Part shown: positions 17,325-28,244 of the stretch, piece after piece
How the letters are laid out: the number at the start of each line of letters is the position of its first letter
How positions within the stretch are numbered: the first letter of the stretch is position 1
Assembly: GCA_002104945.1 (NCBI GenBank)
Contig: MCFH01000044.1
Coordinates: forward strand, 186,001 to 250,000
Direction: 5' to 3'
DNA length: 64,000 nucleotides
From: Piromyces finnis finn
Lineage: Eukaryota > Fungi > Neocallimastigomycota
Made by a program: the position numbers and the translations under genes
Notes under the pieces: generated by a model
Database searches by the model: none
Told to the model about the DNA's origin: nothing
Seen by the model: only the letters and a program-made list of their open reading frames with translations

Positions 17325-18343
17325 ATGCGTTATAATTTCGCTGTAATATGTGCAAGTAATCAAAATCGTAGTATGGAAGCTCACAATGCGTTGAGGTAAA
17401 AGATAAAATGACTATGATTGATTTGTGTGTTAAAATGTTTAATATTTAACCATTATTAATATTTTTATATAATTTGTATAATTTGATTTGATTTAATTTA
17501 AATAAAATAATAGTAAGGGCGGATTTAATATAAAATCATATGGTACTGGTAGTGCTGTTAGATTACCAGGTCCTTCAATTGATAAACCAAATGTCTATCC
17601 ATTTGGAACGGTATTTATTTATTACAATTACAATTTGAATTTTCCTATTAAAAATTACTTTTTTTATTAAATAATTTTAATTTTAAAATATTATCATCAT
17701 TTCTAGCCGTATGAAGATATTTACCAAGATTTACTTAAAAAAGATGTAAATTTATATACACAAAATGGTTTATTAAAAATGTTAGATAGAAATAAGAAGA
17801 TAAAAAGAGCACCAGAAAGATTCCAAGATTCGACCGGAATATTTGATATTATATTTACTTGTGAAGAAAGGTGTTTTGATGCAGTATGTGAAGGTTAGTT
17901 TAGTTAGTAAAATATATAAGAAAATAGAAATTAAAAATAAAAAATCAATTTTTGTTTTATTTTAAATAATTAATTTATTAGTATTAACTATTTTATTCCA
18001 AAATAATAACAACAATAATAGATTTAATTAACAGAGGATGTGAAAATAATAAACCGGTTCATGTTATTAACATAGAAATTAAAGATAATCATGAAGACGC
18101 TGCCGTAGGTGGTCAATTAATTAAAAAATTAGCAACAATGGTAAATATTTACATTAATTAAATAGAAAAATTAAGAAATATAATGTAATCATCATCTTAT
18201 TTAACATTAAATATTGTTAATATATATGTTAATAGCTTGAAAATATAGAAAGTGAAGATATAGGATGTAGTGTTGAAAATACTTTAGAGGAATTCCAAAG
18301 AGAAACAAATTGTAGTATACTACATTCATTATCTTATTATTAA
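17325..18343 (+). CDS. SSU72: RNA polymerase II CTD phosphatase Ssu72
   Basis: Five exons give [20 protein letters not shown] (CX5R catalytic loop), [70 protein letters not shown] and ..LHSLSYY*. Confidence 0.95.
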
Positions 18344-19044: not shown

Positions 19045-22000
19045 ATGAATTATAATGATTACATTGATAATAATAAAAAAAAAAGTAATAAAAATTTAAA
19101 ATCTATAAATGGAAATTTTAGGAATAGGAGAAGCAGTAATGATATTTCATTACAAAATAGTAATTCTAGTATAAGCAATATAATAAGTAATTCAAATCTT
19201 TTTTCAAATAATGATATTCCAAAATTTCTGCAACAGGAAAATCCGGGAAAGTTACAAATATTTAAAACTAATTCAATTACTGAGCCTGAAATAAATACAA
19301 CTACTTTGAATTATAATGGATATACTTCACATGATATGCGCTTATTATGGACGGCATTCGGAAATATGCCAGATGAAGAAAAAAATACTTTTTTAAAAGG
19401 TTTAGTTTATCGATTTAGTCAAAAACAAATTGATTTAACATGTACTTTATTAAATTTAAAAGTAGAAGATTATATGGTAAATTTTAAAATATAATAACAA
19501 TAGTAGTAATAAATATATTACTATTATTACTTACATTATTTTCATTGATTTATTTTAAAATAAATTTATTCAAGACAAAAACTGTAATTCCTTCCGAATA
19601 TAAAAATAAATCGTTTAAACCAAAAATAAAAAACATTTTTGAAAAAGAAATAACTTATGATCATGATTTTCTTAAAGGAAAATTACCAGCATTACCGTAT
19701 GCTTAATAAAACAATAAATAATCACATACACACATATATATATTTATAATTAACACATTTAATTGTTATATTATTTAGAATTAAATCAAACAATAATAAC
19801 AAAAAGGTACAAAGTATAATGAATAAATCAAATCTCTATACTCAACTATTAAATCAAGATTTTGATTGTGATGAAATAAAGAAACAAAGCTGTAATATGA
19901 ATCAAGAAGAAATAAAAAAATGTTTAGAATTTGTATGCGATCGTTGTAAAAAGACTCAAACTTTTTTGAAAGATATTAATGATATTATGATGGAAAATGA
20001 CTTAAAAAAGGACCTTCTTTTACTTATTAAATCTATCAATAAAATTATCAATGGAAAGTATATTTGTTGTTATAGTATTAACAATGAAGATGGTAATAAT
20101 TTATCGGTTCAAGCCTCAAATTGGTCATTTTCTAAATCAGATACAGAAAACCCATCAGTATCTCTATTATCATTACCAAAAGCAGATAATAATATTCCTA
20201 TAAGTTCGATTTTTGCAGGAAAGGATATCATGAATAAAAATACAATAAATGCATTTAATATATACAATTCGGAATATTACACTCATGAAGTTGCCAATCA
20301 TTATAATATAGATATGAAATGTATTTTATCAACACCAATCTTTTCACCAGATAATTGTAAAGTTATTGGCATTTTAGAGGTGATTAATAAAAAAGATGAT
20401 AATGATATACCATATTTTTCAATAGAAGATGAATATATTTTGAAAACTATGAGCTCTATTTGGAGTATTATTTTAAGACAATGCCTAATTCAAGAAAATT
20501 CAGAAAAGCATCTTGATAATATTAAGAATGTATTTACAGTTACTAGAATATTGAATCATACTATGAATGTTGATGAATTAATAAATATTTCAGCATCGTT
20601 ATTAAAAGAAATAACATATTCTACTGGTGCTCATTTATTTATTCTTGATGAAACAGGACAAAGTATGTTTACTGTTTTAAATGATAAGAGAAAAAGTTTT
20701 TTATCAAATTTAGGAATAGTTGGTACGAAATAAGGATTTCTTAAAATAAATTTGAAACATTTAAAGTAAATAAAATTAATTATATTAATTATATTAATTA
20801 TTAATATTTATTAAAAGGTGATGTTATGCATACTGGAAAAACTATAAAAACTCACAAAGGTAAATTTTATATATTATTTTCATATTTGAATTTCTTAGTA
20901 AAATTTTTTTTAATATATATATATATATACGTTAATATTAAAGTATATGAACATCCATTATATAATGAGGAGGTAGATGATTTATATGAAAATATTAATA
21001 TAAAAACAATGATATGCGTTCCTGTTAAAAATAGTGAAGAAAAAGTTATTGGTGTATTTCAGGTTATAAATAAACTTCCAGAAAAAAAACCATTTACTGC
21101 CAAAGATGAAATTCTAATCTCAAATTATTGTTTACTCAGTAATTAAATAAATAATTAGATATATTATTATATATTTATATATTTATAATATTTATTGAGT
21201 ATATAATTTATATATTATTTTATTTTCGATAAACATTTTATTTTTAAAAAGTTGCATCACTTCTTAAGAAAGTTTATTTATGTAAACTTTTAAAAAGGTC
21301 TATTAAGCAATTAAAGAGAAATAATAATATTTTCAGAAATATTGTGGAAAATTTCCCAAATGTTGTTCTTACATTAAATTCAGATGGATCATTAAAAACC
21401 ATTAATCAAAAGGATATGATGTTTTATGAAAATGAAATTAAATTAATGCAAGAAAAATCATATACTCAGTGGTTAGAATCTTATCCAATGCTAGTAGCAG
21501 ATATTACCAAGATTTCTAGAAGAGGTGGTATTGCATATGCTTATAATTATGACATGAGTGGTGATGATGGTGAACCATTTTTTGTTAATTATACAATATT
21601 ACGTTTTAATAAAGAAGATGATCCTAAATATTATGGAATATTCGATGACAAAATTCAACTTAAAATAAATAAACTATTTGAATCCCCCGATGAAGAAGAA
21701 GATAAAGAGGATCATAAAATGAATATTAAAAATACTATTGGCCGATATATTAATAATATTAATTTTGTACTTAATAATAATGAATATGGGTTAGAAAATA
21801 CTACAATGGTTTGTTTTGAAAATGTATCAAATGAAAAACGTTCTATGGTTGCAATAGAAAGGTATATCAAGTTTTGTTACTTTTAAATATTATAAAATTT
21901 TTAATTAATTTAATATATTTAAATAATATAAACACAAAAGGGTGATGGGTTCGACTAATGTAAAAGAATACATAAAAATTAAAGATAAAACTGCTAGAAA

Positions 22001-23208
22001 AAAAAGCCAAGAAATAACTTTACTTGCTATATATATTAAGAATTGTAAAATAATATTTAAAATAAAAAAATAGAAATATAAAAATAAAAAACTAAATTAA
22101 TATTATTTTATATTTTAAAGTTAATGAAATTATTAATAATATGGAGGACACCGAAAAATTAACTGATGTAACAGAAAAATACTTATCTTATATAACAGAA
22201 AAAGTTTCAAAAAACCATGGGGTATGCATATAGTTTAATTTTAAAATATATTTTTATTAAAATCAAATTTTTATCAATAAGAAACCTTTATTAAATTTTA
22301 ATTTTAATAATGATGTATAAATATTAATTCTATAATTATTGTTTTAAAAGAATATATATAGTATGAATGAATCTAAAGTTATTGTTGCCTTCGGTTTACC
22401 AAATTCAACACAAAATGATATAGAGAATGCATTAAACTCTTCTCATGAAATATTAAATGATCAAAGTATCTTATCTCATGATATTAATGTATATCCAGAA
22501 ATAGAACTTGGATTGGCTATTATATCTGGACCAGCTATATCAATTGTTGCCAACACCAATAATCGAGCTGTAAATACTATTTTTAATTATATATAAGATA
22601 ATAAAATAAATGAATTATAAATATGATTCTAAATAATTCTCAATATATTTATATAATTATTTTATAAATATAGATGTTTAATATTTATGGAAGTATGCAC
22701 TATTTTAATATTTTCATATATGTATATATAAAAATTAAAATATTTTTCTTTTTTTTTAGATATATTAAATGTTTTGGAAAAACAATTAAAATATACAGCA
22801 AAGTTTTTTGTCAATTTATTAGTTACAGAAAACATTAATGATGTTGCTAAAAATATGTATCACACCAGAAAAATATTTTCAATTGTTAATAATAATGAAA
22901 CATATAATTGTATGTAAATATTTTACTTTTGTTAAATTGTTAATATATACTTACTAATAATTTCAATATTTAAATATATAGTATTCTCTGTTGAATCACC
23001 ATTAAGAGAAGAACTTTCACAAGATATATTAACATCCAGTATATGCTATGAACTAGGTTTATCTGACTTTATTGCAAAAAATTGGTTTGGTGCATTAAAT
23101 CATTTCAAAAAATCATTTATATTAGTTAATGATGGACCAAGCAAAGCTATGATGAAACGTTGTGAAGATATATTAGAAAATTCAAAAATAACAATGCCAT
23201 CATCATAA
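19045..23208 (+). CDS. GAF-GAF-PAS-class III nucleotide cyclase-like-TPR protein (CyaB-like), catalytically degenerate
   Basis: Multi-exon reconstruction: GAF-A (ILSTPIF..VIGILEVINKK..FSIEDE), GAF-B (YEHPLYNEEVD..MICVPVKNSEEKVIGVFQVINK..FTAKDE), PAS-like (FRNIVENFPNVVLTLNSDGSLKTIN), cyclase-like (TLLAIYIKNF..KVIVAFG..LGLAIISG..NIYGNILNV) and a TPR-like tail (YELGLSDFIAKNWFGALNHF..DGPSKAMMKRC). Confidence 0.75.
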
Positions 23209-23607: not shown

Positions 23608-26600
23608 TTATTTTTTTAATGATTGAAGAAATTTTCGTGCAATATCAGCTAAACCATTAACCAATTCATCATTATCTCCTTTAATATTAAGAGAAATGAC
23701 AATATCATTATTTTTTCGAATACTTTGTTTTAAAAGTGCAGCTATAATGTTTCCTTGAACTGATTCTCCTACTAATGTAGCTGCACTATTAACAACTTCA
23801 ACTACATACAGTTTTAAAAGTTCCTCAGATGTATACCTTACAATAGATTGTATTTTTTCTTGTGTTATATTAGAAGGTAATGTAACTTTAACGATTGCAT
23901 TTTGCTTAATTTTATTTGGATCTGAAATAATTTCAACAAAATAATCAGAGGTAATTGGAAAACTTGGTTTTTTCATATAAACTGTTAATGGTAAAGAGAG
24001 TTTAAATGATTCTTGATAGTTTTTAGGATCAACAGACAAATCCTATTGATTTTATTTTATTTATATACATATATTAATATTATATTAATTACCAAAATAT
24101 TATATATACCTTCACTATGATTTTATTTCTTTTTTATTTTTATTTTCATCAATTTCATACTTACTTGATATTGAATAGAAGCTGGTAAAGTTAAATCCAT
24201 AATTAATGAACTACTTAAAAGATTAATTTTCTTTTCGACTGTAACAGCTTGATTTGGTGAAACTATAAGTGGAAAACTGTTATCATCATTCACTATATGA
24301 GCCTTCATTGTTTCAGCAATTTCAAATTTTATTATTTTAATATTATCTTTTTCAATATTATTTTTTATTAGAAATTGAACAAGAATAACATTTGGTTCAT
24401 TTGTATATTCCCATTTATATATCATAGAAATGATTTTTTCATTAAGATGAACATTAGAATATTGATTTATTAATTCATTTGTGGATGGAATTTTTCTTTT
24501 TAATGATTTTTTTTCCTTTTTTATTTCAGTCTTAGTTGATATTGATGATTGTATTAATACAGGATTTATTTCTACTAGATTATTTTGATTATTTGATATA
24601 GTTATTGTTTTTTCTCCTACAACTGGCTTTGGAAGTTCTGTTAATTCTTCTGAGTTTCTTTTACTTTTTTTTGTCTTTTTAATTCCCTTTTTTTTCTTCT
24701 TTGATTTAATTTCAGTTTCATCATTAACTTGTTTTTTGTTTTTTTTGGAGGATAACTTTTTGCTCTTTTTCACTTTTTTGTTTTCTTTTACTAATACACT
24801 TGTTTTCATTTCTTCAAACTTTATTAAGTCAAGATTTTTTAATACCTTTTCTTCCTCATCCTTATCATCATCATCATTGATCTCAACAGCACCTTCTGGT
24901 ATTTCTTCATCTTCCAAAAAAACGAAATTATTATCAGTTTCATTTTCATTTGTTGGATTTATAACAAGCTTCTCGTCTTTTAATATTTTATATTATAATA
25001 TAATGTTTTATAAATAAAAAAATAAGAATAAAAGTACAAATCAAAAGTTATACTTCATAATATTAAATTAATATAATATTTATTTTACCGAAATCATAAG
25101 TAAATTTAACAATAGGAATTTCATCAATATCTGGCTCATAAAATGAATTTTGAGGTTTTTCATCATCTTCATCGTCAAGATAAAATAAATTATCCTTTTT
25201 ACTTTGTTCTCTTTTTTTTCTTGCTTCTCTTAATTCTTGCTTAGTAGGTTCTTTTATTTGTTTAGGATTAATGACTCTTGACATCCAGAAATATCTAGAT
25301 TCATCCGCGAATGATGATTCAATTTCATTTAACATTTCTTGAGCTTCTTCATTAATTACATGATCTAAATCTAGCTCATTTGGAACAGGAACCATCTTTT
25401 GAGCTTTAATAGCTACTGGCTTTAATTCACCATCAAATAAAGAATCAATACTTTTAATAAGATCTTTATCTACATCATTAATAGGATCATATTGTTCATA
25501 AATCTTGTTTAATATTTCAAGAACTAAATTGGCTCTGTCTTGAACTTCAATGCCTGAATTGTTCATAAATAATTGTAATTTTTGCATTATCATTGTAGTG
25601 ATTTGTTTAAAAGCATCAATTGATGATTCATTGAAATCAGATTTAAGTAACCAATAAATGTATATCTTTAATATTGCTATTATATAGTTATTTTGAACTA
25701 TATCTGATAATTCTTTGGCTTCGCTTGAAGTTAAACTGAATAGTAAATCCTCAACATTTTCTATATCAATTGAACTGTAATATAACATTGAAATTAATTA
25801 TAAAATAAACAAAATAAATATTAAATAAATTTATATTAATAATTTATTCATTTCAGGATATAAATCATACTTTCTAAACTCTCCAAGTAAATATGATGCA
25901 ACGTATAGTACATTTGAGTTTCCTGCTTTTATAAATTTCTTTTCAAATATTACTTTATTTTTTAATAATTCAATCTAAAATAATAATTAAATAAAAAAAT
26001 AATTAATATTATTTTATATTTTATTTTTAAAATATTACAACAATTCAAAATTATATACCATTTTTTCCATAATGAATTTTCTTAAAGGAGTATCTTTTAA
26101 ACGAATACAAACATCCATCAATTGATTAGCAACATTATCAACATTGTATATATTCTCAACAAAAGAAATATTGCATAATGTACAAATATACCATTGGAAA
26201 TTAGATATATTAGCATATTTATCTTTGGAACATATGTTTAGAATATTATTAACAATACAACTTCTATATTCTTTATCAGTGAAAATATTAATATTGTTAA
26301 ACCATTCATCTTCATCCTTAATAAGATAGCTCATAAGTTTGTCAACAATTGGTATTAGAGTAGGTTTTGTGACCTTAATTAAGTGTATATACAAAATAAT
26401 AATGATAATAATAATAATAATTAAATTAAATAATATGTAAATTATATTTTATTATATTTTTTAATATATACATTTAAAAACTTTATTTTTGTTTACCATT
26501 GATGGAATAAGATCTAAAGCTTTTCTTCTAATTGTAAGATCAATATCATCTAATCTTTCTAAAACAATGTCTGTAAATGCACCTATTACTTTTGGGAAAA

Positions 26601-28244
26601 TTACCACAAGTTCACTTAATGCTGATAAACCCAAATAACGTACTATTATTTATTATTTTTTAATTATAATATAAATATAATAATAATATATTAATTATAT
26701 ACATATATATACTTTTAGATATTTTTCAATATTTTTTTTTCTTTGACTTTTTTGAACATACAATTTGCATCACGATCAATAATAAATTCTTTTAGTTTTT
26801 CAACACAAAGTGAAATTAAAGCTTGATTAGCTTGTTTAATAAGGCCACTTTTTATCATTGAATTTAAGATTTCATATGCAAATGATGTGGCTGATGTTCC
26901 TTCTAAAAGTAAACCAAATGCTGGTAATATTTTTTTTGCTAGACGTGGTTCTTCAGGTGCTAATAAAGCAAACTATATATATATATATATATATATAATG
27001 TAATATTTAATATGAATTATGAATTATATTATTACTTTTAATATATAAAATTTATACTTTTTATTATTACTAACCAACTTGACAATTTTTATAGACAACC
27101 AATTATTCGAACAATTACTAAGAATATTATAAAGCTGCGGAACTAGAGGTAAATAATTTCTAGGATTATGAGTTGCCAATTCACAAATAACACTAACAGT
27201 AGCAATAACAACGCCTATATTATCAATATATAATTATTGATAATTTAATATCAATTCTTATAATTATATATAATGATTGATAAAAATAATTACTTGTATG
27301 TTCATCTTCTAACTTTTCTTTTAATTTTGGATATGCCATAATCAAAGCTTCTGGGTATTGTAAAAAAACTTTATAGAGTAAAACTACAACTCTTTTACGT
27401 ATATATGGCTGAGAATGATTCATCATTCTTAAAAGATCATCAATTAAATCTCTTGCTAAATCAGGTGTTACAATTTGTGATAATCCATTTAATGCTAAAG
27501 CTGTTTCATACATTTTATTTGAAGTTAAATCCTTTATTTATCAGTATGTATTTATTATAATATTAAACAGTATGGAATGTTAGATACTTATTATTATTAT
27601 TATTATTATTTTATTTCATTTCATTTTTTTTTTTATTTTTAGATTTTCTTTTAAACTTTTTTTTTTTTTATTATATCTACTTTTTTAATTAAGTTTGTAC
27701 AAAGCATTAAAACATCTGTATCTTTATTAAATGATTGTGCTGCTGCAAGATAACCAATTCGTTTATATTGAAACTTTTGGGAAGACATTACCTATTCATT
27801 ATATTTATTATATAAATATATATTAATAATTTATAAAAATAAAAGTTCCAATGAAATGCGAATATATATTATATATTTACTTCAACAACATGAAAACTGG
27901 CCCAACTCATATCATAACCTAACATATTTAACTTTTTTGTTTTTGTTTTTATTTGTTGGTTTAAATATGATAATAACATTAATAGTAATAAAGTGGAATA
28001 TTAATTTTTTTTCTTAAGTCACTCTTTTCTCTTTTTCATTAATTACTAATAATTTAAATAATATATATATATATTAATTTAATCATACATAGGTTAATTT
28101 TTGAAGTGCAACTGCCTTTATATCAATATCATTGCTTTTTATTTCTGTTGTAATTTCTTCTAAACATGAAGCAATATAATCTTCTTCGCCCTTTTTATTC
28201 GCTCTTATTCCCCGAATTAAATCGGCCAATGATTTTTCAAACAT
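23608..28244 (-). CDS. AP3D1: AP-3 adaptor complex subunit delta
   Basis: ATG at 28244: MFEKSLADLIRGIRANK..LGYDMSWASFHVVEVMSSQKFQYKRIGYLAAAQSF..VTPDLARDL..PYIRKRVV..NNWLSIKIVKL. Then an acidic/Lys-rich hinge and a C-terminal appendage. About 11 GT-AG-bounded exons. Confidence 0.95.

What the first reader, a model, noticed from the sequence alone, without database searches (positions are those of the whole stretch)
19045..23208. CyaB-like GAF-GAF-PAS-cyclase-TPR protein with a dead catalytic site: candidate pseudo-cyclase cNMP sensor
Seen in sequence after splicing: the domain order matches cyanobacterial CyaB1/B2-type adenylyl cyclases. Both GAFs keep the N-K-x(n)-F-x3-D-E signature (INKK..FSIEDE; INKL..FTAKDE) that marks cNMP-binding GAFs of PDE2/5/6/10/11 and CyaB. 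In the cyclase-like domain, canonical VLFSDIRSF reads LLAIYIKNF (first metal Asp to Tyr), DKYIGDAIMAVFG reads YSMNESKVIVAFG (second Asp and the specificity Lys lost), and GDGVNLGSRLE reads GNILNVLEKQL (Asn kept, Arg to Lys). The frame is intact to the end, so it does not look like a decaying pseudogene. Inference: a cNMP receptor/scaffold, or an allosteric partner in a heterodimeric cyclase, possibly acting in zoospore signalling.
Basis: partly seen in the sequence, partly recalled or inferred. Interest (0 to 1): 0.7.

Follow-up and report, generated by a model that had tools for sequence, protein, structure and literature searches.

The report
Dead CyaB-type cyclase in gut fungus
This is a real, well-conserved fungal gene descended from a bacterial-style cAMP-making enzyme that has lost its catalytic residues and probably its cAMP-sensing pocket, yet is still kept by selection, so it must now do some non-enzymatic signalling job.

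Summary
Window 19045-23208 (+) is a 12-exon, 1,054-codon gene, GT..AG at every junction, including a 19-nt micro-exon. Its domain order is a conserved N-terminal motif, GAF-A, GAF-B, PAS, class III cyclase-homology domain (CHD) and a TPR-like tail, the order recalled (not verified here) for cyanobacterial CyaB1.

The six canonical class III positions (D, K, D, T/D, N, R) read Y813, S854, S858, N926, N933, K937. Two further anaerobic-fungus orthologues in syntenic loci are intact. They read Y-S-S-N-N-K and Y-S-S-N-S-K. Selection is purifying (omega 0.10-0.11 overall, 0.12-0.17 in the CHD).

- The gene belongs to one orthologous family spread across Chytridiomycota. Blyttiomyces and Phlyctochytrium bullatum keep all six residues; other lineages lost them at least three separate times.
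- The window lineage has also rebuilt the cNMP-type pocket of GAF-B. The CyaB2 Arg291 equivalent is Gly, the TG..T block is gone, and only 25 of 61 family-conserved columns are kept. NKFDE alone therefore does not support a cNMP sensor.
- The CHD lacks both half-sites, so it cannot complete an active site in a heterodimer.

Best reading: a selected, non-catalytic signalling scaffold. It is a new variant of a known kind. Splicing could not be confirmed with reads.

The parts
19045..19476 (+). Exon 1 (aa 1-144). Low-complexity N-terminus followed by a conserved motif (aa ~95-140, nt ~19327-19464) shared with the chytrid orthologues; its function is unknown.
   Evidence: ATG and GT donor. Consensus H..IQ.TW..F..M.D..RN.LLKGL......KQ...ICT.LN in A1. 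7 of 10 chytrid-conserved columns kept. No Pfam hit. Atlas lead Beta-TrCP_D at 0.85 only.
19575..19696 (+). Exon 2 (aa 145-185), a linker.
   Evidence: AG/GT flanks conserved in L001 and L004.
19779..20722 (+). Exon 3 (aa 185-500). Helical lead-in, the whole of GAF-A (aa 245-430, nt 19957-20514) and the first half of GAF-B. Includes Gly468 (20626-20628) at the CyaB2 Arg291 column.
   Evidence: PDB phmmer 5w10 E 7.5e-4. AF2 pLDDT 84.3 and Foldseek top hits PDE5A, PDE2A and CyaB2 GAFs. NK..F...DE columns invariant or >=90% conserved. 20 of 24 conserved columns kept in GAF-A.
20818..20859 (+). Exon 4 (aa 500-514), the GAF-B middle piece (GDVMHTGKTIKTHK).
   Evidence: Conserved as 42 nt with AG/GT flanks in L001 and L004.
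20944..21138 (+). Exon 5 (aa 514-579), the GAF-B C-terminal half with INKL...FTAKDE. The 'D..TG..TR' block of the relatives reads DDLYENINIKT here.
   Evidence: Pfam GAF 27.8 bits (cut-off 22.4). Alignment A6. Family profile versus CyaB2 1ykd E 2.7e-72. Only 25 of 61 conserved GAF-B columns kept.
21252..21861 (+). Exon 6 (aa 579-782). GAF-B C-terminal helix/linker, then a PAS domain (about nt 21314-21861) with a ~50-residue disordered insert before the last strand.
   Evidence: hhalign A3 versus the bacterial PAS profile A4: 99.4%, E 3.3e-21. AF2 model with core pLDDT 84-94. Foldseek top 50 are all PAS/LOV.
21941..22044 (+). Exon 7 (aa 782-817). Linker and the first CHD strand. Tyr813 (22032-22034) sits at the first metal-Asp column (LLAIYIKNF).
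22121..22221 (+). Exon 8 (aa 817-850), CHD helix 1-2.
22351..22569 (+). Exon 9 (aa 851-923), the CHD core. Ser854 (22360-22362) is at the substrate Lys column. Ser858 (22372-22374) is at the second metal-Asp column, with Glu857 next to it.
   Evidence: Orthologous fragments P0275 and P0276.
22674..22692 (+). Exon 10, a 19-nt micro-exon (MFNIYG). Asn926 (22680-22682) is at the second substrate column. The exon is needed to keep the reading frame.
   Evidence: AG|ATGTT...GGAA|GTATG conserved in L001 (5008-5026) and L004 (6305-6323). Skipping it gives a stop after two codons (sequence).
22760..22909 (+). Exon 11 (aa 930-980), the CHD C-terminal part. Asn933 (22768-22770) is kept and Lys937 (22780-22782) sits at the Arg column.
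   Evidence: The Asn column is Ser in L004.
22982..23208 (+). Exon 12 (aa 980-1054 plus TAA), the TPR-like tail (ICYELGLSDFIAKNWFGALNHFKK...DGPS...RC).
   Evidence: 14 of 20 chytrid-conserved columns kept. Profile positions 222-247 hit consensus/engineered TPR proteins. Pfam TPR_2 is only weak on the exon alone.

Best explanation
The gene encodes a non-catalytic ('pseudo-cyclase') descendant of a CyaB1-type, GAF-regulated class III adenylyl cyclase.

Shown:
- It is an intact 12-exon gene whose product has an N-terminal conserved motif, two GAF domains, a PAS domain, a cyclase-homology domain and a TPR-like tail.
- It is the anaerobic-fungus member of a single orthologous family found across Chytridiomycota, whose nearest outside kin are bacterial-type GAF-GAF-PAS-adenylyl cyclases with all six catalytic residues.
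- Five of the six catalytic positions are replaced in the window protein (Y, S, S, N, N kept, K). All six are replaced in one sister orthologue.
- The cAMP-contact residues of GAF-B are also replaced.
- All domains remain under strong purifying selection.

Inferred:
- As a homodimer it cannot bind the two metals or the nucleotide in the canonical way, so it makes no cAMP or cGMP.
- It probably no longer senses cAMP through GAF-B as CyaB1/2 do.
- Selection is retaining the dimeric GAF-GAF-PAS-CHD chassis itself. The best-kept parts are the N-terminal motif, GAF-A, the PAS and the TPR-like tail. I therefore expect it to act as a signalling scaffold or sensor whose output is a conformational change or protein-protein contact, with the CHD dimer and TPR tail as the output face, rather than second-messenger synthesis.
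- The ligand, if any, and the partners are unknown.
For: - Gene model and conservation. Synteny of the three loci, with Ssu72 upstream and AP-3 genes downstream.
- Domain verification.
- CHD homology of the window protein itself: chytrid C-terminal HMM 166.6 bits; canonical-only HMM 70.9 bits, E 5e-18, one continuous match over aa 747-1048.
- Six-residue table: the window and L001 read YSSNNK and L004 reads YSSNSK. All 13 complete bacterial-type rows and the chytrids P0164 and P0168 read DKD(T/S)NR.
- Tree: the fungal clade has 100* support, the canonical fungal members are nested inside it, at least 3 losses are required, and each catalytic column changes 6-14 times.
- GAF-B pocket: CyaB2 contact residues from PMC4411481 were mapped through the printed 1ykd alignment to G468, H470, V, L, D and E529. 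The pocket lacks the Arg in all three orthologues.
- Selection: omega 0.10-0.11 overall, CHD 0.12-0.17 (bootstrap 0.10-0.30, p=3e-11 against neutrality), GAF-B 0.07-0.11.
Against: - No biochemical data exist. Inactivity is inferred from residues only.
- The full spliced protein could not be sent to Pfam, AF2 or fold search, so there is no structure-based superposition of the window's own CHD. Glu857 lies next to the Asp2 column, and a register shift cannot be formally excluded.
Run X1's 0.68 share of words equals the 0.681 expected for a fully spliced mRNA, but it also fits genomic DNA at about 98.8% identity.
- Extreme AT bias and a very long branch (2.11) may inflate the apparent remodelling and distort NG86 omega values.
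- The scaffold or output role is an inference by elimination, and no partner has been identified.
Confidence: 0.7

Rival explanations
1. It is a regulatory subunit that heterodimerises with a catalytically intact class III cyclase. It would either complete one active site, as in mammalian C1/C2, sGC alpha/beta or chytrid RGC/NeoR, or poison it as a dominant-negative decoy.
For: Class III cyclases act as dimers, and obligate heterodimeric cyclases exist in chytrids (RGC1/2 with NeoR, PMC7655827; PMC10622942). Unchecked notes from this scan report other cyclase genes in the same genome, namely 12-TM adenylyl cyclases. Some chytrid orthologues (Rhizophydiales: D K D T/S L/Q R) keep a full metal half-site and would fit a C1-like role.
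Against: The window CHD has neither half-site: Y and S at the metal columns and S, N, K at the Lys, Thr and Arg columns. Even the Asn is Ser in orthologue L004. A heterodimer with an intact partner would therefore have no complete site, and only the decoy version survives. No same-family paralogue with canonical residues appeared among anaerobic-fungus sequences in the exon-3 and exon-9 searches, although those searches cannot see distant paralogues. The tree looks like one orthologue per lineage.
Confidence: 0.15
2. It is still a cyclic-nucleotide receptor. One or both GAF domains bind cAMP or cGMP despite the substitutions, and the dead CHD merely relays the signal.
For: Both GAFs keep the NKFDE positions and the GAF fold. 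The family's GAF-B belongs to the cNMP-type subfamily, with top PDB hits CyaB2, PDE5, PDE2A, PDE10A and PDE6. The chytrid orthologues keep the CyaB2-like pocket almost intact. GAF-B in the window lineage is under strong constraint (omega 0.07-0.11), so the pocket may still bind something.
Against: The Arg that hydrogen-bonds N1 of cAMP in CyaB2 (R291) is Gly, Gly and Asn in the three anaerobic-fungus orthologues. The T293 column is His. The 'EIR.P', 'D.RF' and 'TG..TR' blocks are replaced, and only 25 of 61 conserved GAF-B columns are kept. Fungal GAF-A lacks these residues throughout the family. NKFDE is also present in the second GAF of PDE5 in the alignment.
Confidence: 0.12
3. It is a still-active cyclase that uses non-canonical residues, for example Glu857 together with another acidic residue.
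For: Glu857 is adjacent to the Asp2 column, Asn933 is kept and Lys937 is a conservative replacement for Arg. The domain is under purifying selection.
Against: Tyr sits at the first metal column, with no acidic residue from five positions before it to five after; the nearest are Glu806 and Glu819. The phosphate-loop 'GFT' reads 'NFN'. Five of six residues are changed, the Asn is not conserved among orthologues, and these columns drift freely across the fungal family.
Confidence: 0.03

Closest known systems
Cyanobacterial CyaB1/CyaB2 (GAF-GAF-PAS-class III adenylyl cyclase; the TPR-like tail of CyaB1 is from my own recollection of Kanacher et al. 2002, not verified here) and the bacterial-type GAF-GAF-PAS-cyclases found here (P0169-P0190, e.g. 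a Chloroflexi MAG protein)
   Same: The domain order is the same and the proteins are collinear over about 70-80% of their length. The family's GAF-B profile hits the CyaB2 tandem GAF structure 1ykd at E 3e-72. The PAS is homologous at 99.4%. The CHD and tail match a profile of these proteins at 70.9 bits.
   Different: Those proteins carry D K D T N R and, where tested (CyaB1/2), are cAMP-activated enzymes. The window protein has Y S S N N K, a rebuilt GAF-B pocket, an extra ~250-residue N-terminal region with a fungus-specific conserved motif, and lineage-specific inserts in GAF-A and the PAS.
The chytrid orthologous family (e.g. Spizellomyces punctatus SPPG_04984 / XP_016607637, Batrachochytrium hypothetical proteins, Blyttiomyces KAJ... 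P0164), annotated only as hypothetical or 'guanylate cyclase domain-containing'
   Same: Full-length collinear homology including the N-terminal motif and TPR-like tail. One clade with 100* support. Widespread degeneration of the catalytic residues.
   Different: The window lineage sits on a very long branch (2.11) and is the most degenerate at the metal and substrate columns. It alone has also lost most of the otherwise highly conserved GAF-B pocket (25/61). Blyttiomyces and P. bullatum are still fully canonical.
Known non-catalytic or half-site class III cyclase domains: mammalian AC C1/C2 and sGC alpha/beta pseudo-symmetric sites, and the chytrid NeoR/RGC heterodimers including the dead CcNeoR4
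   Same: A class III cyclase fold is retained while catalytic residues are lost. There is a precedent in zoosporic fungi: CcNeoR4 lacks metal- and base-binding residues (PMC10622942).
   Different: Those are complementary halves of heterodimers, or a recent dead paralogue. Here a homodimer-type soluble GAF-regulated cyclase has lost both half-sites yet is conserved as a single-copy orthologue under purifying selection.

Membership tests
Class III nucleotidyl cyclase (catalytically competent) | Cyclase-homology domain (sequence/fold homology to PF00211) | tested here: met
   Chytrid orthologues score 35-98 bits on Pfam Guanylate_cyc. The family profile including the window exons hits 2w01 at E 3e-39 and 3r5g at 1.5e-31. 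A canonical-only HMM matches the in-script window model at 70.9 bits, E 5e-18. Exon by exon, the window alone gives no Pfam hit.
Class III nucleotidyl cyclase (catalytically competent) | Two metal-binding Asp | tested here: not met
   Tyr813 and Ser858 in the window. The same residues occur in L001 and L004.
Class III nucleotidyl cyclase (catalytically competent) | Substrate-specifying pair (Lys + Asp/Thr for ATP; Glu + Cys for GTP) | tested here: not met
   Ser854 and Asn926.
Class III nucleotidyl cyclase (catalytically competent) | Transition-state Asn and Arg | tested here: not met
   Asn933 is kept, but the Arg column is Lys937. The Asn column is Ser in orthologue L004.
CyaB1/CyaB2-type GAF-regulated adenylyl cyclase | N-terminal tandem GAF, then PAS, then CHD (then a TPR-like tail in CyaB1) | tested here: met
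CyaB1/CyaB2-type GAF-regulated adenylyl cyclase | NKFDE motif in the GAF domains | tested here: met
   INKK..F...DE in GAF-A and INKL..F...DE in GAF-B. These columns are invariant or >=90% conserved in A5 and A6.
CyaB1/CyaB2-type GAF-regulated adenylyl cyclase | cAMP-contact residues of GAF-B (CyaB2 R291, T293, I308, T309, D356, N359; PMC4411481) | tested here: not met
   The equivalents are G468, H470, V (kept), L, D (kept) and E529. The Arg column is G, G and N in the three orthologues.
CyaB1/CyaB2-type GAF-regulated adenylyl cyclase | cAMP binding and cAMP-stimulated cyclase activity | not testable with these tools
   Needs binding and enzyme assays.
Chytrid GAF-GAF-PAS-CHD-TPR orthologous family (unnamed) | Full-length collinear homology including the N-terminal motif and tail, and placement inside the fungal clade | tested here: met
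   166.6 bits for the C-terminal part; clade 100*. Conserved columns kept: N-terminal motif 7/10, GAF-A 20/24, PAS 7/10, tail 14/20.
Half-site subunit of a heterodimeric class III cyclase (C1-like or C2-like / NeoR-like) | One complete complementary residue set: D+D, or K+(D/T)+N+R | tested here: not met
   Neither set is present.

The most novel reading that the evidence does not exclude
Zoosporic fungi carry a single-copy descendant of a CyaB1-like cAMP-autoregulated cyclase. It has been converted several times independently into a non-catalytic signalling module. In anaerobic gut fungi both the input (the cNMP pocket of GAF-B) and the output (the active site) were rebuilt, while the dimeric chassis, an added N-terminal motif and the TPR-like tail stayed under strong selection. 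On this reading the protein has acquired a new ligand and a protein-interaction output. It would be a natural case of a second-messenger enzyme turned into a pure sensor or scaffold, and it could be tested side by side against still-canonical orthologues (Blyttiomyces, P. bullatum).
Probability: 0.35. Interest if true: 0.65.

Novelty: new variant of a known kind. Interest (0 to 1): 0.5.

Why it matters
Pseudoenzymes derived from class III cyclases are known mainly as the degenerate half of heterodimers. Here a whole soluble, sensor-coupled cyclase has lost catalysis, and in this lineage its cNMP pocket too, yet it persists as a conserved single-copy gene across an entire group of flagellated fungi. 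Active and inactive orthologues exist side by side on one tree.

That offers a natural series for asking two questions. What does a cyclase-homology dimer do when it no longer makes cAMP? How does a GAF-PAS sensor get rewired? It also warns against counting 'guanylate cyclase domain' or 'NKFDE GAF' annotations as cNMP signalling capacity in early-diverging fungi. The Spizellomyces orthologue lies in a genetically tractable chytrid (PMC7213984), so the question is experimentally approachable.

Tried and rejected
- **Exon-by-exon Pfam and PDB searches of the cyclase region.** These found nothing, because the domain is split into five small exons. Homology had to be shown through relatives and profiles.
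- **Full-length anaerobic-fungus protein model.** I looked for one in the protein collections so that a referenced sequence could be folded, and found none. Only exon-sized ORF calls exist.
- Pfam, PDB, AF2 and fold search on the joined spliced protein were not run. The joined model was used only inside local scripts, as an alignment row and as an hmmsearch target.
- **`read laying`.** Those places were sent to no search tool afterwards. Two local scripts that read window.fa aligned the region, that intron included, with fetched loci.
- **Pseudogene reading.** Rejected, given three intact orthologues, conserved splice sites and omega about 0.1.
- **Separate active paralogue.** I considered whether the canonical chytrid proteins were a distinct paralogue. 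This is rejected as the simplest reading, because they nest inside the fungal clade next to degenerate Chytriomyces on short branches.
- **Beta-TrCP D-domain lead for the N-terminal motif.** Pfam gave no support on ten N-terminal segments.
- **Literature.** Five searches found no description of this family.


Full report
**Gene model**

The window is about 20% G+C and its genes are interrupted by short introns. Between 19045 and 23208 on the + strand I derived 12 exons, all bounded by GT..AG. They give 3,165 coding bases, 1,054 codons and a TAA stop at 23206-23208.

One exon is only 19 nt long (22674-22692). Without it, exon 9 runs into a stop after two codons of exon 11.

The joined model existed only inside local scripts.

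**Orthologues and selection**

A word search with exon 3 found three exon-sized fragments at 83-92% identity. A word search with exon 9 found two more. Their contigs hold two complete orthologous genes:
- L001 (JGI 3300019378; L007-L009 are the same type)
- L004 (ENA ERZ27247467; also L005 and L006)

Both lie in the same neighbourhood as the window gene, with Ssu72 upstream and AP-3 subunit genes downstream on the other strand.

All 12 exons, including the micro-exon, and their AG/GT flanks are conserved. Between the window and L001, exons are 76-90% identical and introns 65-80% with many indels. Both orthologues have intact reading frames of 1,055 and 1,049 codons.

Nei-Gojobori estimates of omega over the three pairwise comparisons:

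| Region | omega |
|---|---|
| Whole gene | 0.10-0.11 |
| GAF-A | 0.05 |
| GAF-B | 0.07-0.11 |
| PAS | 0.05-0.07 |
| CHD | 0.12-0.17 |
| Tail | 0.09-0.16 |

For the CHD in the window-L001 pair, the bootstrap 95% interval is 0.10-0.30 and neutrality is rejected at p=3e-11. The gene is therefore not a decaying pseudogene. The strong AT bias makes these estimates approximate.

**Domains**

- **Exon-by-exon scans.** Only GAF in exon 5 passes Pfam (27.8 bits). Exon 3 hits a cAMP-binding GAF structure (5w10, E 7.5e-4). The 73-residue cyclase-core exon finds nothing on its own.
- **Full-length relatives.** The one large representative search, run with exon 3, returned relatives of 943-1,115 residues. 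All named ones are from Chytridiomycota: Batrachochytrium, Spizellomyces, Polychytrium, Cladochytrium, Clydaea, Boothiomyces, Phlyctochytrium, Chytriomyces and Geranomyces. A later search added Entophlyctis, Globomyces, Polyrhizophydium and Blyttiomyces. Seven of the first ten carry GAF plus Guanylate_cyc in Pfam, with modest cyclase scores of 35-77 bits.
- **C-terminal region.** An HMM of the chytrid C-terminal region matches the window model over residues 783-1051 at 166.6 bits. An HMM built only from canonical bacterial-type cyclases matches residues 747-1048 in one continuous alignment at 70.9 bits, E 5e-18 for a nominal 10^6 sequences.
- **Solved structures.** A reference-only alignment of chytrid CHD-plus-tail segments, with the window's exons as separate rows, hits solved class III cyclases at E 3e-39 (2w01) and 1.5e-31 (3r5g, CyaB). 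Its tail columns hit consensus TPR proteins.
- **PAS.** The region is homologous to the Pfam-verified PAS of the bacterial-type relatives (hhalign 99.4%, E 3e-21). An AlphaFold model of the window's own exon 6 has core pLDDT 84-94, and all of its top 50 Foldseek hits (E ≤ 0.0023) are PAS/LOV structures.
- **GAF-A.** A model of the window's GAF-A (pLDDT 84) matches the PDE5A, PDE2A, CyaB2 and PDE6 GAFs.

The domain order GAF-GAF-PAS-CHD-TPR-like is therefore confirmed. It is preceded by about 250 residues holding a motif conserved with the chytrids.

**Catalytic residues**

I defined the six columns on a canonical sequence and read them across 35 proteins.

| Group | Asp1 | Lys | Asp2 | Sub2 | Asn | Arg |
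|---|---|---|---|---|---|---|
| Bacterial-type GAF-GAF-PAS-cyclases (all 13 complete rows) | D | K | D | T/S | N | R |
| Blyttiomyces, Phlyctochytrium bullatum | D | K | D | T | N | R |
| Rhizophydiales, mostly | D | K | D | T/S | L/Q | R |
| B. dendrobatidis | N | S | D | T | Q | R |
| Other chytrids | zero to three of the six kept | | | | | |
| Window and L001 | Y | S | S | N | N | K |
| L004 | Y | S | S | N | S | K |

The phosphate-loop 'GFT' also reads 'NFN'. The single canonical residue kept in the window (Asn933) is not conserved among its closest orthologues.

**Phylogeny**

An IQ-TREE analysis (31 rows, 873 columns, quick search, SH-aLRT support) gave these results:
- The fungal proteins form one clade (100*), separate from the bacterial-type proteins (100*).
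- Subclades roughly follow chytrid orders.
- The fully canonical fungal proteins nest next to degenerate Chytriomyces (97*) on short branches.
- The window clade sits on a branch of 2.11 substitutions per site, weakly (87) sister to Spizellomycetales.

Parsimony needs at least three canonical-to-degenerate transitions. Each catalytic column changes 6-14 times within the 19 fungal rows and is constant in the bacterial-type rows, apart from one T/S. The simplest reading is one orthologous family, ancestrally an active adenylyl cyclase, that lost catalysis repeatedly.

**The GAF pocket**

The family's GAF-B profile hits the CyaB2 tandem-GAF structure at E 3e-72, followed by PDE5, PDE2A, PDE10A and PDE6. 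This places it in the cNMP-type subfamily.

PMC4411481 lists the CyaB2 GAF-B residues that contact cAMP: R291, T293, I308, T309, D356 and N359. It also says NKFDE is conserved in most characterised cNMP-binding GAFs. The printed 1ykd alignment has a chain offset of 57, which lets these residues be mapped to family columns.

- In chytrid and bacterial-type relatives the Arg and the surrounding blocks ('AER.xLF', 'EIR.P', 'D.RFN', 'D.KTG..TR') are highly conserved.
- In the window they read 'STGAHLF', 'KSFLS', 'HPLYN' and 'DDLYENINIKT'. The R291 equivalent is Gly468, T293 is His470 and the N359/'TG' position is Glu529.
- All three anaerobic-fungus orthologues lack the Arg (G, G, N).

Counting columns that are at least 85% conserved among 15 chytrid proteins, the window keeps the following:

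| Region | Columns kept |
|---|---|
| N-terminal motif | 7 of 10 |
| GAF-A | 20 of 24 |
| GAF-B | 25 of 61 |
| PAS | 7 of 10 |
| CHD | 9 of 20 |
| Tail | 14 of 20 |

Fungal GAF-A lacks the Arg and the D..TG..T block in every member. The NKFDE positions are retained in both GAFs. They are also present in the second GAF of PDE5 in the alignment, which from my own knowledge does not bind cGMP. The motif alone therefore does not diagnose binding.

In this lineage the two most-changed modules are the presumed cNMP input (GAF-B) and the cNMP output (CHD). Both are nonetheless constrained today.

**Mechanism**

*Shown:* the architecture, the loss of five of six catalytic residues (six of six in L004), the loss of pocket residues, purifying selection, and family-wide repeated degeneration.

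*Inferred:* in a homodimer each class III site needs the two Asp from one chain and Lys, Thr/Asp, Asn and Arg from the other. This is established knowledge of class III cyclases. The window protein supplies neither set. A homodimer should be inactive, and a heterodimer with an intact cyclase would have no complete site either. Only a decoy role remains for the heterodimer idea.

Chytrids do have obligate heterodimeric cyclases, and even one dead paralogue, CcNeoR4 (PMC7655827, PMC10622942). Those subunits keep complementary sets.

My best explanation, at about 0.7, is a selected, non-catalytic dimeric sensor or scaffold whose output is conformational or protein-protein. The N-terminal motif, GAF-A, the PAS and the TPR-like tail are the parts that matter. 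What it senses and whom it contacts are unknown.

**Expression**

Four public runs of the coded 'organism A' hold 21-68% of the sampled 31-mers. None is on record as RNA, and the tool only guesses RNA. The best share, 0.68, equals the 0.681 expected if a run held the fully spliced mRNA and no introns. Genomic DNA at about 98.8% identity would give the same number.

Transcription, splicing and zoospore expression therefore remain untested. I sent those places to no search tool afterwards.

**Organism**

I did not verify the organism with a marker gene. Three observations fit an anaerobic gut fungus (Neocallimastigomycota):
- the composition of about 20% G+C
- orthologues found only in metagenome or Logan assemblies
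- placement within or next to Chytridiomycota

Earlier notes of this scan also call it a gut fungus (unchecked).

**Novelty**

Five literature searches found no description of this fungal family. Its members are annotated as hypothetical or 'guanylate cyclase domain-containing'. Pseudo-cyclase domains as such are known. This is a new variant of a known kind, with a family-level pattern, active and dead orthologues on one tree, that makes it experimentally attractive.

Noticed in passing
window 19327-19464 (aa ~95-140 of the protein): A short N-terminal motif (H..(I/L)..(T)W..F..M.D..(R/K)N..LKGL......KQ...(I)CT.LN) is conserved between the window protein and all full-length chytrid orthologues and is absent from the bacterial-type relatives. 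It has no Pfam family. The ESM Atlas feature search points weakly to the beta-TrCP D (dimerisation) domain / DUF4508 (score 0.85), but Pfam did not confirm this on ten N-terminal segments.
   Followed up: partly
window 22674-22692: A 19-nt micro-exon flanked by introns of 104 and 67 nt is conserved in length and splice sites in two orthologous loci. Automatic gene callers are likely to miss it, which may explain why no full-length model of this gene exists in the protein collections.
   Followed up: yes
window ~17495-18150 (+) and 23608-27800 (-): The neighbours are collinear with L004 and L007. An Ssu72-like phosphatase gene lies upstream. Several exons of AP-3 adaptor subunits (Mu_AP3, AP3D1, Adaptin_N by the precomputed Pfam hits on the loci) lie downstream on the minus strand. 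My own Pfam scan of four window ORFs there gave nothing at E 0.01.
   Followed up: partly
window 20130-20190 (GAF-A, aa ~303-323) and 21630-21800 (PAS, aa ~705-760): Lineage-specific, low-confidence (pLDDT < 50) inserts sit in a GAF-A loop and before the last PAS strand. They are present in all three anaerobic-fungus orthologues and absent from the chytrid relatives.
   Followed up: partly
P0164 (Blyttiomyces sp. JEL0837) and P0168 (Phlyctochytrium bullatum): These two chytrid orthologues keep all six catalytic residues and score 89-98 bits on Pfam Guanylate_cyc. Their tree neighbours Chytriomyces sp. MP71 and P0029 are degenerate. They would make a natural active/inactive pair for experiments.
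   Followed up: partly
According to the tool, the filter also trips by chance. Nothing further was done with them.
   Followed up: no
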